This document shows, one piece after another, positions 21,735-35,639 of a stretch of DNA of 64,000 bases. The position numbers and the translations under genes were made by a program. Source of the DNA: Euprymna scolopes (Eukaryota); the NCBI GenBank assembly GCA_053919585.1, contig CM132821.1; one strand, 5' to 3'. Each line of letters opens with the position of its first letter. The first letter of the stretch is position 1. The notes under the pieces are model-generated. The model saw nothing but the letters and a program-made list of their open reading frames with translations. It had not been told where the DNA came from and ran no database searches.

Positions 21735-22320
21735 AGATGAGAATTGGTTATTCATATTATTTGGACTACTGTTCTTATCTTGAGTGTCATTTTTACAACG
21801 TTTCGGTCCATGTAACTTCCGACCTTCTTCAGGTGGATGTAACCTCCGACCTTCTTCGGGAGTATATTATCGAACTCCATAATGTTTCTGTCCAACTCGG
21901 GAATCTGTACGGAATTTCAAACGGAGGTAGCAAGTAATTCACAATTATATTTTTTTGGTCTCTCACACTGAGAATTGAACTTTCAACCTTTAAGATAATA
22001 ACTTTTACAATTGAATTTTTTTCAAGTACTCTAATCACTGCGCCATGGGATCCAATCAGAAAAGTCATATTATCCTGAAGGTTCAATTCCCAGTGTAGGC
22101 AACCGAAAAATACAATTGTGAATTACTTAGGACTTCTATTCAGTCATGGCTGGCGGAATAAGAACATGCTACCCATGTGAAGTAAATAAAATGCTTCGTT
22201 CGAAATTCCGTCCAGATTCCAGAGGTCGACATGAAGGTTGGAGGTCACATTGACCGAAACGTTGTGAAAATGACACTCAAGATGAGAACAGTCGTCTGAA
22301 GAAGGCAAATAATATGATAG
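21735..22320. mobile_element. Fold-back family H2: ~590-bp palindrome with hammerhead-like cores on the arms
   Basis: The left arm ctgttcttatcttgagtgtcatttttacaacgtttcggtc pairs with the right arm gaccgaaacgttgtgaaaatgacactcaagatgagaacag. The complementarity continues inward. Confidence 0.8.
21794..21836 (-). ncRNA. Minimal type I hammerhead ribozyme motif (Penelope type)
   Basis: cac CUGAAGA a GGUC-ggaaguuacaug-GACC GAAAC GUU gua. The conserved core and stem II are intact. Confidence 0.6.
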
Positions 22321-24990: not shown

Positions 24991-25169
24991 TAAACATGTT
25001 CCTAAGACAATATATCTTCATTGAACTCGTAGGCATATTGACTATTTTTTAAGAAATATATATACCTTAAAAGTATACAGTATACATTTTATTTTCATTC
25101 ATATATATTTAATAAATGTTCTGAGTTTGTTTCAAAGTGTTTAAAATTCATACAATTGTTTCTGCCATT

Positions 25170-27624
25170 TTAAAACAAGCATTCTCTTATATATTATTCA
25201 ATGTCCATAATGTGGAATGGTTGACCCACTCAAATAAGACAGATGATGAGGGAAGGTTCTGTCATGATTTTTCCATTGCCTATGACCTCACTCAGATTGT
25301 TCACGAACCAACCCGTATGTCTGATACTACCGGTCAGTATGCAAGCTTTCTAGACCTTTTTCTCACAACTTCCTCTGAACTATGTCCATGTTCCGTTCTA
25401 TCTCCCCTGGGATCCTCCCACCACTCCGATAAAAATTAAATGTAAGTCTTCAGACGTACCTCTCCACCGTACTGTATACCGATACTCTATGGCTGACTGG
25501 GATAGCTTTCATACACTCATATCTGATCTATCTCTGCATTCCATGTTTAAAAAGGAGGTGTCCTCTATAGTATCAGACCTGACCGAATGGTTAATTGTAG
25601 GCATAGACCGATTCATACCATCCAAAGAATTCCAGCAAAAACCTAACAGCCAGCCATGGTTCTCCCCTGAATGTGCTGCTGCCATCGCACACAGAAATCA
25701 CTTTTTCCATAGCTACCAACGTAACAGATAGACTGAGACTAAAGCTGCTTTCAGGACTGCCAGCAACCACTGTAAAAGAGTAATAAAAAAAATGCAAGCA
25801 AGCTATATGCTCAGTCTGTTAAATCCAAAGTAGCTGAGCAGCGGCTTGATTCCCACCAGTTTTGGCAAATTGCAAACAGGATCCTGAACCGAAGTGTGTG
25901 TTCTATCCCAAGCATAAGCATAATCAATGGACCTGAGGTCATCTCGTCAGCATCAGACAAGGCCAAACTATTTGCCAAGAACTTTGCAGCTAATTCTACC
26001 CATACGACAAGAGCATCAACTCCCCGTATTTCCACCTATAACACAGAACACGTTATGCAACACACAAATATCTGTGCGTGAGGTCGCCAAGCTAATCAAG
26101 AATCTTGATTCCAGTAAAGCAACTGGCCCAGACGGCATTCCAATTATAGTGTTGAAAAACTTGCTCCTATACTTACAAAACTGTTTAAGCGTTGCCTTAA
26201 GAATTCAGGTGATAAGTCGTCTCCCTCTCTGTCATGAGTAAGCAGCTGGAATCCATATTAAATAAGTCAATCACTTCAGCAGAAATAATCTTTTCAGTGA
26301 CATGCAATGTGGTTTCCGTTCTGCTAGATCTACAGCAGATGTGCTAACGGTTATATCTCATAGGATTAGTGAATCTCTCGACAAAGGCTTCCTTTCTACG
26401 GCAATTGCTCTTGACATATCAAAGGCCTTCGATAAGGTATGGTATAAAGGACTACTTCACAAGATTTCCAGCTATGGAAATGTTTTCTCTCTCATTAAAT
26501 CGTTTCTCTCTGATAGGCTCATAAGAGTAGTGGTTGATGGGCAGAAATCAGAGGCCCTCAGTATTAATGCTGGAGTCCCTCAGGGGTCCATACTGGGCCC
26601 AACTCTCTCCCTGATCTACATCAATGATCTCCCAAAACACATACTTAAATCATTCGTTGACATCTATGCTGATGACATGACCATCTATGGCAACACATCA
26701 AAGGCCATAAATGACAAAGTTCTCTCTAATTCTCTCTCCTTTGATCTCGAGCGCGTGTTTCAGTGGGGGAAGAGGTGGTTGGTTACTTTTAATGCATCTA
26801 AAACCAAGCTACTATCTTTACATCATCAACGCTCTGATCCCCATCTGGCATCAATTGAAATGGATGGCTCTCGTCTTGGGGAGGCTCTATGTTTTGGCAA
26901 GCTTCTGGGTTTGACCTTTACTCCTGATCTGAAATGGAACACGTACATCAAGTCTGTTGCCAAGGTCGCTGGGAAAATGGTGGGATTCTTCTACCGCTCC
27001 AGAAGATATCTCACTACTGATGCAATTCTCTATCTGTATAAAAACCAGGTACGTCCAAGGATGGAGTACTGCTGCCACATCTGGGCTGGAGCTGCTAAAA
27101 ACAGCCTATCCTGCCTTGACAGAGTACAAAATAGACTTTGTGGCTTAGTGGGGGATGCCCTTTTCTCTTCCCTGCAACCTCTCTCCCTCAAAAGAGATGT
27201 TGCGAGCCTGTCTTTGTTTTATTGCTATTTCCATGGCAATCATCCGAGCTCCAATCTCTGCCCCCCCCTTTCATGATAAACACCCGTCTAGCTGAAACCA
27301 CTGTCAGTAATTTTTCCCACTCTTTATCTGTGCCTAAATCAAAACGTAGATTCCATGAACAAAGTTTCTTTCTAAGAAGTGCACGCCTGTGAAACTCTTC
27401 CGTTTGCCTGTTTCCCACCTGACTACAACTTGGATGTCTTCAAGTCCAACATAAACAAATTCCTGATGAATCGCCCCCTTAAGTAAGACACTTTATCAAA
27501 TCTCCAATACTAAGGATTACTATGATATTATCCCATTGATTACTGTACACGCAATAACCCTTATCCCCGATTGGCTTCCAGGCCTTGATAAGAGGTGACT
27601 ATGTAAACAAAAAAAAGAAAAAAA
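25170..27624 (+). mobile_element. CR1/L2-group LINE subfamily B, APE-RT ORF2 pseudogene with 3' UTR and A-tail
   Basis: APE remnants (NVHNVEWL, LTQIVHEPTR, LDLFLT, LGSSHH). RT motifs KATGPDGIP, QCGFRSARST, LDISKAFDKVW, GVPQGSILGP, YADD and MEYCCHIWAGA (ORF 26302-27276). Multiple frameshifts. Confidence 0.92.
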
Positions 27625-27629
27625 TTCAT

Positions 27630-27933
27630 TATTGAGATGAGTGTTATTTATTGTGGATATTACCCTAATCTTTTTTAGTTGTTGTTCTTTCACGACGTTT
27701 CGGCCAATTATTCCTCTGGCCTTTGTCAGGTGGTAACCACGATGGGATAGAAACTCCGGATCTCCTAACTGCATCCTCAGCAATTGCAGTTAGGAGATCC
27801 AGAGTTTCTTCCCCGTTATGGTTACCACCTGATGAAGGCCAGAGGAATAATTGTTCGAAACGTCGTGAAACAACAACTAAAACAGATGAGGATAATAGTC
27901 CGCAATAAATAGATTAATGCATTCTCTTGATAA
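27630..27933. mobile_element. Fold-back family H1: ~300-bp near-perfect palindrome with a hammerhead core on each arm
   Basis: Arms 27646-27773 and 27785-27910 are reverse complements around an ~11-nt loop (tcctcagcaat). Confidence 0.9.
27821..27871 (+). ncRNA. Minimal type I hammerhead ribozyme motif (right arm; mirror copy 27691-27732 on minus strand)
   Basis: cac CUGAUGA a ggcca-gaggaauaau-uguuc GAAAC GUC gug. Stem I is cac/gug. The left-arm copy has a perfect ggcca/uggcc stem II but CUGACAA in the core. Confidence 0.65.
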
Positions 27934-28403
27934 CAAAATAAAGACGTTTTCAAAAGTCCTTTTCAGTGAATTTTTTTCCATCCAATTAAGTTCAAAATTA
28001 TAAAAGAAACTAAGATAATTATGATACGATGATAAAGCCGACATTACGAAAGGAATTAACATTATTTTCCCAGAATGTATTTTTTAATACTAGTTTTTCA
28101 AGTTTACTTAAAGAACTAAAAAGATTTTTCGTCGATCTGTTGAGTTTATTGTTTGTGTTTAATTTGATGGGAAAAAATCACCGAAGAAACCTTTAAAAAA
28201 TATTGAGTTAATTATCAAGAAAAGGTAAACTTTAAAACAATTGGACGAATTAAAAAGTTGTTAAAACAAATTCAGAACATTTATCGAATTGCTATTTTAT
28301 ATTAATCGTTTGATAATAAAATATTTTATTATTACATTATACATTACTGTATTTTCAGCACCAGTAATTGATACACTATTCAGCTATTAACTCAACTTTT
28401 GTG

Positions 28404-28468
<65 letters not shown>

Positions 28469-34942: not shown

Positions 34943-35385
34943 TAAAACGAAACTATTATCATGAAAGTATGTCATGGTTGTATTACTTTATCTATTTATG
35001 TATTTACTTTATCTTTATCTTTTTTTTTTGTTTGGTTTTTTTCTGGAACAAAACTATTAATGAGACAACAAGTTTGTTTTATTTTGTTTGTTAAATTTTA
35101 TCTAAAAAAATGTAAAATATTGAAGCTACAGAAGAAATCTTTCCGATAATCAAACTTAATTCGATAAAATATGAAGAAAAAACTCTCAGAAACATGTGTA
35201 TAGCATTATATTTTGTACGATTTATTCTTTTGGAGTGTGATTTAAATATTTTTTCAATACATATTGAATTTATTCATAAAACATTTTAAAAAATAATAGA
35301 ATTATCTGCTTAATTATACCATTTTATTTTCATGTATAACAATTTTTGTGTAAGTTAAAAAATATAATGTATGTTCCATATGTAT

Positions 35386-35432
35386 CACGAACGTTTTCGA
35401 TTCTTCATCAAATCATCATCATCATCAGGTAA
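35386..35432 (-). ncRNA. Hammerhead motif in the Penelope 3' repeat, with a (TGA) slippage expansion
   Basis: uac CUGAUGA (ugauga)u GAUU-ugaugaag-AAUC GAAAACGUUC gug. It has a palindromic AACGUU stem III and lies on the same strand, 3' of the GIY-YIG fragment. Confidence 0.55.
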
Positions 35433-35639
35433 AAAAAACTTCTAATTAATAAAAAAGTTGGAAATAAGAGAGTTTCAAAAGATGGCTGAGAAACAAGCGC
35501 GTGAAGCCAGTTAGACACTAAGAGAACGTTCTCACGCTGTTCCAGGAGAGATATTAACAATTTAAATTCCACAACACTAAAATTAGTGTAACAAAATAAA
35601 AAACTGTATGGTTTCAGAAGGTATTTTAGTGTTATTAAC

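What the first reader, a model, noticed from the sequence alone, without database searches (positions are those of the whole stretch)
27630..27933. Palindromic element carrying a hammerhead ribozyme core on each arm (family H1)
Seen: a ~300-bp near-perfect hairpin whose arms each encode cac-CUGAnGA-A-ggcca/uggcc-GAAAC-GUC-gug, both pointing outward, so a transcript in either direction ends in a ribozyme motif. The arms have different lesions (left CUGACAA core; right stem II uguuc), so their consensus is an intact motif. Known: Penelope-like elements carry minimal type I hammerheads with a vestigial stem III that are proposed to cleave as dimers, and their pseudo-LTRs can be inverted. Inference: this is a non-coding, Penelope-mobilised fold-back element combining MITE-like and retrozyme-like traits. 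The long hairpin would sequester the ribozyme and could also be a Dicer/ADAR substrate.
Basis: partly seen in the sequence, partly recalled or inferred. Interest (0 to 1): 0.8.

Follow-up and report, generated by a model that had tools for sequence, protein, structure and literature searches.

The report
Head-to-head Penelope-type hammerhead SINE relic
The 300-bp palindrome is two truncated copies of one abundant short non-coding retroelement inserted head to head, each with a damaged minimal hammerhead ribozyme motif; this is the usual insertion scar left by Penelope-like retrotransposons, not a new kind of fold-back element.

Summary
Window 27623-27942 is a near-perfect hairpin.

The motif is a textbook minimal type-I hammerhead (min-HHR) of Penelope-like elements (PLEs). 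The genome holds 5,616 exact copies of the strict motif, against 0 for the reversed control. Non-CpG core positions are better conserved than the flanks. Helices I and II covary across four families.

The fold-back is not a unit that amplifies as such. Each arm is a 5'-truncated copy of a ~415-nt non-autonomous element with a tRNA-like head, a min-HHR about 100 nt from the 3' end, and an optional ~35-40-nt tail. Of 50 loci, 38 are head-to-head pairs, every one with a different junction. In 30 of the 38 pairs the tail sits at one end only, and TSDs of 11-16 bp flank whole pairs. This is the published PLE insertion signature. Autonomous RT+GIY-YIG PLEs in the same genome form the same pairs.

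The window copy has no promoter head and both ribozymes are crippled. The hairpin sequesters the motif, and two polyA RNA-seq runs give no depth on the unique flank. No partner PLE was identified, and no cleavage was shown. Other windows of this scan had already reported this SINE family. The case is ordinary: a new member of a known kind.

The parts
27623..27790 (-). Left arm: a 5'-truncated copy (about positions 224-402 of the ~415-nt unit) of the HHR-bearing non-autonomous element. Its outer end includes part of the optional tail (…ACTCATCTCAATAATGAA) and abuts the A-rich end of the upstream LINE.
   Evidence: Blast to the natural full-length copy L037:1328-1745, 79% identity; alignment of 81 arms.
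27785..27942 (+). Right arm: a 5'-truncated copy (about positions 241-400 of the unit). The junction with the left arm lies in the short natural palindrome GCAATTGC.
27691..27732 (-). Left-arm min-HHR: CAC-CUGACAA-A-GGCCAG…UUGGCC-GAAAC-GUC-GUG. The core is inactivated by G8>A (+ strand position 27724). Helix II is intact.
   Evidence: Sequence; aligned as win_left in A1.
27826..27867 (+). Right-arm min-HHR: CAC-CUGAUGA-A-GGCC…GUUC-GAAAC-GUC-GUG. The core is intact. The helix II 3' strand is mutated at 27854-27855, giving one wobble and one mismatch. The predicted cleavage site lies between 27864 and 27865.
   Evidence: Reads from paralogous copies carry G and C at 27854 and 27855 (table 3).
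25137..27626 (+). Neighbour, not part of the element: the degraded 3' part of an APE-type non-LTR LINE (Exo_endo_phos_2 and RVT_1 ORF fragments), ending in an A-rich tail at about 27606-27626 that abuts the left arm.

Best explanation
The palindrome is one old insertion of a ~415-nt non-autonomous, SINE-like retroelement, and it was non-functional from the moment of insertion. The retrotransposition machinery of a Penelope-like element (PLE), an RT plus GIY-YIG endonuclease, very probably copied it.

PLE integration often leaves two 5'-truncated copies head to head with their 3' ends outward, flanked by one target-site duplication (TSD), with an optional 30-40-nt tail at one end. Here both arms were truncated at about unit positions 224 and 241. 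The insertion therefore lacks the tRNA-like promoter head and keeps only the 3' part, which holds the minimal type-I hammerhead (min-HHR).

Shown here:
- the motif anatomy;
- the family copy number;
- covariation in the helices and extra conservation of the core;
- the variable junctions, the one-sided tail and the TSDs in relatives;
- the same head-to-head architecture in the autonomous PLEs of this genome.

Inferred:
- The mechanism is target-primed reverse transcription from nicks on both strands, with the two cDNAs joined at short palindromes.
- Whatever the hammerhead does for the master copies (dimeric processing of tandem or longer-than-unit transcripts, or recognition by the PLE protein), it does nothing at this locus. 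One core is mutated, the other has a weakened helix II, the two motifs lie on opposite strands, and any transcript would lock the motif into a ~140-bp duplex.
For: Motif and family:
- The strict motif occurs 5,616 times in the genome, against 0 for the reversed control. This extrapolates to about 26,000 arms.
- A structure-aware descriptor finds 56 min-HHRs in 354 kb of held DNA, against 0 in shuffled and 0 in reversed controls. All 56 have the 1-nt bulge.
- Non-CpG core columns are 97.7-98.2% conserved, against 92.7-93.4% for flanks (permutation p = 0.002-0.007).
- Across four families, 96.2% of helix I and II cells are paired. Five of 8 pairs show compensatory double changes, 0 of 500 shuffles reach the observed score, and slid controls give 16-41%.

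Insertion architecture:
- 38 of 50 loci are head to head (-/+), against 1 tail to tail. All 5' truncation points differ. The tail sits at exactly one end in 30 of 38 pairs.
- TSDs of 16, 14, 13, 12, 12 and 11 bp flank whole pairs.
- All five close motif pairs among the first 100 genome hits are in -/+ order.

Penelope link:
- The genome has 15,395 GIY-YIG candidates, with open frames up to 806-870 aa, many in -/+ pairs.
- One ORF tested contains RVT_1 followed by a C-terminal GIY-YIG domain.
- These PLEs carry their own min-HHR about 75 nt before a (TA)n end, and outward-facing motif pairs occur in 8 of 30 loci.

Literature:
- The min-HHR features, and dual motifs 100-700 bp apart on opposite strands, are described in PMC4209133.
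- The inverted 5'-truncated copy and the one-sided 30-40-bp tail are described in PMC8557442.
- A PLE protein nicks and extends both strands in vitro (PMC11167929).
Against: - No autonomous PLE sharing the element's 3' end or tail was found. The abundant young PLE family has no detectable homology to it.
- No TSD above the chance level flanks the window copy itself.
- Arms within a pair are only slightly more alike than arms of different loci: 87.9% against 85.8%.
- Rfam recognises no hammerhead family here, even at E <= 10.
- There is no evidence of cleavage: no read ends at the GUC site, and the 5' ends of arms do not pile up at the predicted cleavage position.
- Some rows of the covariation alignment were picked with a descriptor that requires pairing, so the paired percentage is inflated.
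Confidence: 0.85

Rival explanations
1. A MITE-like or fold-back DNA transposon: the palindrome is the mobile unit, with long terminal inverted repeats, amplified by a transposase.
For: Near-perfect long inverted repeat. The query has many similar hits in the genome.
Against: Every one of 38 pairs has a different junction and different arm lengths. The arms are 5'-truncated pieces of a linear 415-nt unit, which also occurs singly and in tandem. TSD length varies from 8 to 16 bp, and the ends are asymmetric, with the tail on one side.
Confidence: 0.03
2. Two independent insertions of the same SINE into nearly the same spot in opposite orientation, or a later local inverted duplication.
For: Arm-to-arm identity (87.7% in the window) barely exceeds identity to unrelated copies. 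The window copy has no clear TSD.
Against: The orientation bias is 38 head to head against 1 tail to tail. All five close motif pairs among the first 100 genome hits are in -/+ order. TSDs flank the pair as a whole in relatives. The two window arms share derived substitutions.
Confidence: 0.05
3. A functional hairpin-RNA locus: the fold-back is transcribed and serves as a Dicer, piRNA or ADAR substrate, whatever its origin.
For: The predicted duplex is very stable. Family sequences appear in polyA RNA-seq on both strands. Rfam miRNA models give weak hairpin matches.
Against: The miRNA scores are 14-40 bits against gathering scores of 80-107 bits, so they are generic hairpin hits. RNA depth is 0 on the unique flank 27938-28400 in two polyA runs, and the reads on the element are 90-95% alike, so they come from paralogs. 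Counts of A>G and T>C sites are about the same in RNA runs (11-13 and 26) as in the DNA run (10 and 21). No small-RNA data were examined.
Confidence: 0.06
4. The hammerhead-like strings arose by chance.
For: Rfam hammerhead models do not match.
Against: 5,616 hits against 0 in the control. 56 against 0 in the descriptor controls. Covariation and excess core conservation.
Confidence: 0.01

Closest known systems
Minimal hammerhead ribozymes (min-HHR) of metazoan Penelope-like elements (Cervera & de la Peña 2014, PMC4209133)
   Same: Type-I topology with no helix III or loop 3. Palindromic A15.1-C15.2/G16.2-U16.1 (ACGU), which permits dimeric pairing. One unpaired nucleotide between A9 and G10.1. 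An invariant G10.1-C11.1 pair. A long helix II (6 bp) and a short helix I (3 bp). [quoted passage not shown] That paper also noted dual motifs 100-700 bp apart on opposite strands.
   Different: Here the motif sits in a short non-coding unit with a tRNA-like head, not in the pLTR of an ORF-bearing PLE. Activity is untested, and both motifs of the window copy are damaged.
Canonical PLE insertion architecture (Craig, Yushenova, Rodriguez & Arkhipova 2021, PMC8557442; PAc biochemistry, PMC11167929)
   Same: Heavy 5' truncation. An inverted 5'-truncated copy adjacent at the 5' end, which forms inverted repeats. Partial tandems (pLTR-like) in relatives. A 30-40-bp tail, usually at one end. AT-rich, (TA)-like termini.
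   Different: The unit has no RT or GIY-YIG ORF. The partner PLE is not identified. In the window copy both arms are truncated, so nothing full-length is present.
[quoted passage not shown]
   Same: A short, very abundant, tRNA-related non-autonomous retroposon that carries a type-I hammerhead.
   Different: The schistosome motif is a canonical HHR that Rfam recognises and that is active in vitro. Here the motif is the minimal form without helix III. The host is a mollusc, and there is no sequence relation.
Metazoan non-LTR retrozymes (Cervera & de la Peña 2020, PMC7229834; bioRxiv 10.64898/2026.07.22.740005)
   Same: Non-autonomous HHR-bearing repeats proposed to depend on PLEs. One relative (L021) is a five-unit tandem array of a 162-bp HHR-containing unit.
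   Different: Retrozymes are direct tandem repeats that yield circRNAs. The window element is an inverted pair whose two ribozymes lie on opposite strands, so no HHR-to-HHR monomer can be excised.

Membership tests
PLE-type minimal hammerhead (min-HHR, Cervera & de la Peña 2014) | Catalytic core CUGANGA … GAAA plus a cleavable UH triplet | tested here: met
   Right arm: CUGAUGA 27829-35, GAAA 27857-60, GUC 27862-64. The left arm fails (CUGACAA, G8>A). The family majority is CUGACGA…GAAAC-GUC.
PLE-type minimal hammerhead (min-HHR, Cervera & de la Peña 2014) | No helix III or loop 3; palindromic 15.2-16.2 (ACGU), allowing a dimeric helix III | tested here: met
   GAAAC is followed directly by GUC in both arms and in all four families aligned.
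PLE-type minimal hammerhead (min-HHR, Cervera & de la Peña 2014) | One unpaired nucleotide between A9 and G10.1, and a conserved G10.1-C11.1 pair | tested here: met
   Bulged A at 27836. All 56 descriptor hits carry the 1-nt bulge. The pair at columns 15-34 is G-C in 13 of 13 sequences.
PLE-type minimal hammerhead (min-HHR, Cervera & de la Peña 2014) | Helices I and II supported by compensatory changes among families of one genome | tested here: met
   Five of 8 pairs have double changes, 96.2% of cells are paired, and 0 of 500 shuffles reach the score. Caveat: some rows were chosen by a pairing descriptor. In the window's right arm helix II is weakened (GGCC/GUUC).
PLE-type minimal hammerhead (min-HHR, Cervera & de la Peña 2014) | Self-cleavage (weak, as a dimer) at the UH site | not testable with these tools
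   Indirect evidence only: no pile-up of RNA read ends at 27864/27865, and arm 5' ends do not cluster at the predicted site.
Rfam hammerhead families (Hammerhead_1, _3, _II, HH9, HH10) | A match to the covariance model | tested here: not met
   No hammerhead hit at E <= 10 on the window element or on a relative with an intact core and only a G-U change in helix II (L033:1590-1670). This is expected, because those models require helix III.
Penelope-like element insertion (non-autonomous passenger) | An inverted 5'-truncated copy adjacent at the 5' end, with variable truncation | tested here: met
   38 of 50 loci are head to head, 1 is tail to tail, and all junctions differ. The window arms are truncated at unit positions 224 and 241.
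Penelope-like element insertion (non-autonomous passenger) | An optional 30-40-bp tail, typically at one end only | tested here: met
   The family's 3' ends fall at about position 370-382 (short) or 408-418 (with tail). The tail sits at one end in 30 of 38 pairs. The window copy has partial tails at both ends.
Penelope-like element insertion (non-autonomous passenger) | A target-site duplication flanking the whole composite insertion | tested here: inconclusive
   Clear in relatives: L004 16 bp, L055 14, L033 13, L010 and L053 12, L022 11. The best match for the window copy is 8 bp, not adjacent to the arm and within the control range.
Penelope-like element insertion (non-autonomous passenger) | An autonomous RT+GIY-YIG partner in the same genome that shares the 3' end | tested here: not met
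   RT+GIY-YIG PLEs are abundant and have their own min-HHR. The family sampled shows no homology to the unit's 3' region.
MITE or fold-back DNA transposon | The same inverted-repeat unit with constant ends and a fixed TSD amplified many times | tested here: not met
   Junctions, arm lengths, end types and TSD lengths all vary between loci.
Non-LTR retrozyme | Direct tandem repeats with a sense HHR in each unit, able to release monomers or circRNA | tested here: not met
   The two motifs in the window lie on opposite strands. A relative (L021:1841-2623) does form a 162-bp x 5 direct array, but no circRNA test was possible.
tRNA-derived SINE | A tRNA-like 5' head with Pol III A and B boxes | tested here: inconclusive
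   Full-length relatives carry TGGCGCAGTGG, an exact A box, and GGTTTCAATCC, which matches 7 of the 9 specified B-box positions (listing). ARAGORN and the Rfam tRNA model find no cloverleaf. The window copy lacks this region entirely.

The most novel reading that the evidence does not exclude
The thousands of head-to-head dimers that Penelope-type integration of this SINE created could act together as a genome-wide source of long perfect-hairpin RNAs, serving as ADAR, Dicer or piRNA substrates in a cephalopod-type mollusc. On this reading the minimal hammerhead is kept in the master copies mainly as a recognition or processing signal for the Penelope protein, not as an efficient self-cleaver. 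My data do not exclude this. Family sequences are present in polyA RNA on both strands, but this particular locus looks silent.
Probability: 0.1. Interest if true: 0.6.

Novelty: new member of a known kind. Interest (0 to 1): 0.3.

Why it matters
The result explains a striking-looking ribozyme palindrome as an ordinary scar of Penelope-type retrotransposition, so it should not be counted as a new class of element.

The family behind it has modest value. It is a very abundant (about 10^4 copies) short element with a min-HHR and a tRNA-like head. Its thousands of natural junctions, one-sided tails and TSDs could be mined to work out how PLE enzymes integrate DNA, for example by priming on both strands and joining at short palindromes.

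I found no description of such a hammerhead SINE in cephalopods in the searchable literature. The concept is already established, however: Sm-alpha in schistosomes, PLE min-HHRs, and retrozymes as PLE dependants.

Tried and rejected
- Rfam at gathering and at E <= 10 on the window element, on an intact relative and on the head gave no hammerhead and no tRNA hit. It returned only sub-threshold miRNA-type hairpin matches, which I treat as generic hairpin artefacts.
- ARAGORN found no tRNA in six whole loci at default settings. On 17 extracted heads it found none at default thresholds, and at relaxed thresholds the hits were inconsistent and close to the shuffled rate.
- Search for the autonomous partner: blastn of the unit against 30 RT+GIY-YIG loci gave only one incidental SINE insertion.
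- Test for a LINE nested into the left arm: the missing terminal ~19 nt of the tail were not found upstream of the LINE. The order of the two insertions is unresolved.
- RNA evidence: laying two raw polyA RNA-seq runs plus one DNA and one possible-RNA contig set at 90% likeness mostly recruited paralogous reads. It showed no locus-specific transcription, no end pile-up and no RNA-specific A>G excess.
- Test of whether arm 5' ends mark ribozyme-cleaved templates: truncation points scatter over positions 277-323. Only one locus (L036) starts at the predicted cleavage product.
- Arm-to-arm identity as proof of co-insertion gave only a small effect: 87.9% against 85.8%, p = 0.001.

Full report
OBSERVATION

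The palindrome is real. The repeat finder reports arms 27681-27773 and 27785-27877 (93 nt, 88% complementary, 11-nt spacer) and outer arms 27658-27686 and 27869-27897 (90%). As RNA the 304-nt stretch folds into one hairpin of -194.6 kcal/mol, against a shuffled mean of -68.2 (z = -24).

The right arm reads, on the + strand:
- CAC (27826-28)
- CUGAUGA (27829-35)
- A (27836)
- GGCC (27837-40)
- loop
- GUUC (27853-56)
- GAAAC (27857-61)
- GUC (27862-64)
- GUG (27865-67)

The left arm reads, on the - strand (27732-27691), CAC-CUGACAA-A-GGCC…GGCC-GAAAC-GUC-GUG. The left lesion (G8>A, + strand 27724) and the harmless C7>U in the right arm are both CpG-type transitions of the family's CUGACGA.

IS IT MORE THAN CHANCE?

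The loose pattern occurs once in the window, against 0.00 expected. Genome-wide, the strict pattern CTGANGA-N-GGCC-N(6-14)-GGCC-GAAACGTC occurs 5,616 times, against 0 for the reversed control.

A structure-aware descriptor required the core, a helix II of at least 4 bp, a helix I of at least 3 bp and a pairable 15.2/16.2. It finds 56 motifs in the 354 kb of DNA I held, against 0 in shuffled and 0 in reversed controls. All 56 have the single bulged nucleotide.

Rfam does not recognise any hammerhead family, even at E <= 10. This is expected, because those models require helix III.

WHAT THE MOTIF IS

Every feature that Cervera & de la Peña (PMC4209133) list for the minimal hammerheads of metazoan Penelope-like elements (PLEs) is present:
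- no helix III or loop 3;
- a palindromic ACGU at 15.1-16.1, which can form helix III only in a dimer;
- one unpaired nucleotide between A9 and G10.1;
- a G10.1-C11.1 pair;
- a long helix II (6 bp in the family);
- a short helix I (CAC/GUG).

Within the family, non-CpG core columns are 97.7-98.2% conserved, against 92.7-93.4% for non-CpG flank columns. The permutation p is 0.002 for all 81 arms and 0.007 for the 37 arms chosen without regard to the motif.

I aligned four families found in this genome:
- the main family;
- the motif of an autonomous PLE;
- a tandem family in L027;
- the family at window 21791-21838.

Across these, helices I and II are 96.2% paired. Five of 8 pairs carry compensatory double changes, no shuffle in 500 reaches the observed covariation, and slid controls give 16-41% pairing. 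One caveat applies: several rows came from the pairing descriptor, so the paired percentage is inflated. The different pair types between families are not affected by this.

WHAT THE PALINDROME IS

The 304-nt query has 3,887 first-look candidates in the 5.9-Gb genome. All scored loci are 73-84% identical to it.

Reading the copies showed that each is an inverted pair of the same sequence, but with a different centre. A single-arm query recovered longer copies and defined a unit of ~415 nt, for which I used the natural copy L037:1328-1745 as reference. The unit consists of:
- a 5' region;
- a tRNA-like head, with an exact A box TGGCGCAGTGG and a B-box-like GGTTTCAATCC;
- a degenerate internal duplicate of the ribozyme segment (AAAAC-GUG);
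- the min-HHR at about positions 282-323;
- a short 3' end at about 370-382;
- an optional 35-40-nt tail reaching about 415.

Mapping this unit on 50 non-redundant loci gave the following:
- 38 loci have a head-to-head (-/+) junction, against 1 tail to tail.
- There are 15 same-strand tandem joints.
- The 5' truncation points are all different.
- The tail is at exactly one end in 30 of 38 pairs, at both ends in 7, and at neither in 1.

TSDs flank whole pairs in relatives: 16 bp in L004, 14 in L055, 13 in L033, 12 in L010 and L053, and 11 in L022. Among the first 100 genome hits of the strict motif, all five close pairs are in -/+ order.

This is point for point the architecture described for PLE insertions. 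It comprises heavy 5' truncation, partial tandems, an inverted 5'-truncated copy at the 5' end, and a 30-40-bp tail often at one end only (PMC8557442). It also fits the finding that a purified PLE protein nicks and extends both target strands, with the tail lying between two internal RT start sites (PMC11167929).

The same genome holds very many RT+GIY-YIG elements. There are 15,395 GIY-YIG candidates, with open frames up to 806-870 aa, and one ORF tested contains RVT_1 plus a C-terminal GIY-YIG domain. Many lie in -/+ pairs. They carry their own min-HHR (CUC-UUGAAGA-A-GCCCG…CGGGC-GAAAC-GUU-GAG) about 75 nt before a (TA)n end.

The fold-back is therefore an insertion by-product, not a mobile unit.

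THE WINDOW COPY

Its arms correspond to unit positions 224-402 (- strand) and 241-400 (+ strand), at 79% and 78% identity to the reference. The junction lies in the natural palindrome GCAATTGC.

The copy lacks the promoter-like head. One ribozyme has a mutated core and the other a weakened helix II. The two motifs lie on opposite strands, so no transcript has two sense copies. In a read-through transcript each HHR nucleotide pairs with the other arm with P = 0.97, and the helix II pairs have P of about 1e-25 or lower.

The copy abuts the A-rich end of an APE-type LINE. The order of the two insertions is unresolved, and no significant TSD remains.

EXPRESSION

Reads laid at 90% likeness from two raw polyA RNA-seq runs are mostly 90-95% alike and only partly fit, so they come from paralogs. 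The unique flank 27938-28400 has zero RNA depth. No position shows a pile-up of read starts or ends. The number of A>G and T>C sites is about the same in RNA runs as in the DNA run. Thus there is no evidence for transcription, cleavage or editing of this locus.

Arm 5' ends in relatives scatter over positions 277-323, and only one starts at the predicted cleavage product. This gives no support for cleaved RNA templates.

WHAT REMAINS OPEN

- The partner PLE. The sampled young PLE family shares no sequence with the unit, and further sampling was blocked.
- Whether the head is truly tRNA-derived. ARAGORN and Rfam say no, and only the promoter boxes match.
- Whether the min-HHR cleaves at all. 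Published PLE min-HHRs cleave poorly in vitro (PMC4209133), and no cleavage ends were seen in Anolis RNA-seq (PMC11167929).

COMPARISON AND NOVELTY

The closest known things are:
- PLE min-HHRs, including the already reported dual motifs on opposite strands;
- the canonical PLE insertion architecture;
- the hammerhead-bearing SINE-like Sm-alpha and Sj-alpha of schistosomes (PMC2770079);
- metazoan non-LTR retrozymes, recently argued to be PLE dependants (PMC7229834; bioRxiv 10.64898/2026.07.22.740005).

I found no paper that describes this family in cephalopods. Other windows of this scan have already flagged the same SINE system in this genome, and a follow-up reached the same reading.

The thing itself is an ordinary relic that was non-functional from insertion, a new member of a known kind.

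Noticed in passing
Blast shows it is a distant relative of the H1 unit (66% identity over unit positions 281-396), not unrelated. Its helix II covaries with H1 (U-A where H1 has C-G).
   Followed up: partly
L021:1841-2623: Five direct tandem repeats (period 162 bp) of the 3' part of the unit (positions 280-415), each with a sense min-HHR. This is a retrozyme-like array, although helix I is mismatched (CAG/GUG).
   Followed up: partly
L037:1475-1530 and equivalent positions 150-205 of the unit: The unit contains a degenerate internal duplicate of its own ribozyme segment (GGCCAGAGGCUUACUUGGCC-AAAAC-GUG). This duplicate overlaps the B-box-like GGTTTCAATCC, so the tRNA-like T-arm region and the hammerhead 5' flank are paralogous.
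   Followed up: no
L062-L090 (for example L067:229-1815 ORF; motif at L069:2275-2331): A young, very uniform autonomous PLE family: RVT_1 plus a C-terminal GIY-YIG, with open frames up to ~806 aa. Its min-HHR starts UUGAAGA (U3 in place of C3) and lies ~75 nt before a (TA)n end. In 8 of 30 loci two outward-facing motifs show head-to-head PLE pairs.
   Followed up: partly
window 35378-35440 (- strand): A hammerhead-like string (CUGAUGA…GAAAAC-GUU) downstream of a degraded region that another note calls a Penelope GIY-YIG relic. The core and helix II look degenerate.
   Followed up: no
window 56535-56634 (- strand): A 5S rRNA match at 42.1 bits, just above the gathering score of 38. It may be a 5S gene, a pseudogene or a 5S-derived SINE.
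   Followed up: no
L005 and L007 (G000:C502:6960-10243 and G000:C41:38466238-38469521): The central 484 bp printed for both loci are near-identical (one difference) and the blast maps of the unit are the same, although one locus is on an unplaced contig and the other on a chromosome. This is probably assembly redundancy or a recent segmental duplication.
   Followed up: no
window 27865: G>A at the first nucleotide after the predicted cleavage site. It is seen in 22-56% of RNA reads, depending on strand and run, but in only 3-6% of contig depth (DNA run X1 and possible-RNA run X2). Most likely the expressed paralogs carry the CpG-decayed GUCAUG variant. This was not resolved.
   Followed up: no
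L039, L055, L045 (arm 5' ends at unit position 75-76): Three independent arms start exactly at the 5' end of the tRNA-like head (GGGG/GGGTCTGTGGCGC…), as expected for Pol III transcripts. Other full-length copies extend ~75 nt further, into the spacer seen in tandem arrangements.
   Followed up: no
window 28400-28468: A compound microsatellite (TG)n(TA)n(CA)n that forms a perfect palindrome. (TA)n tracts are the preferred targets reported for some PLEs.
   Followed up: no
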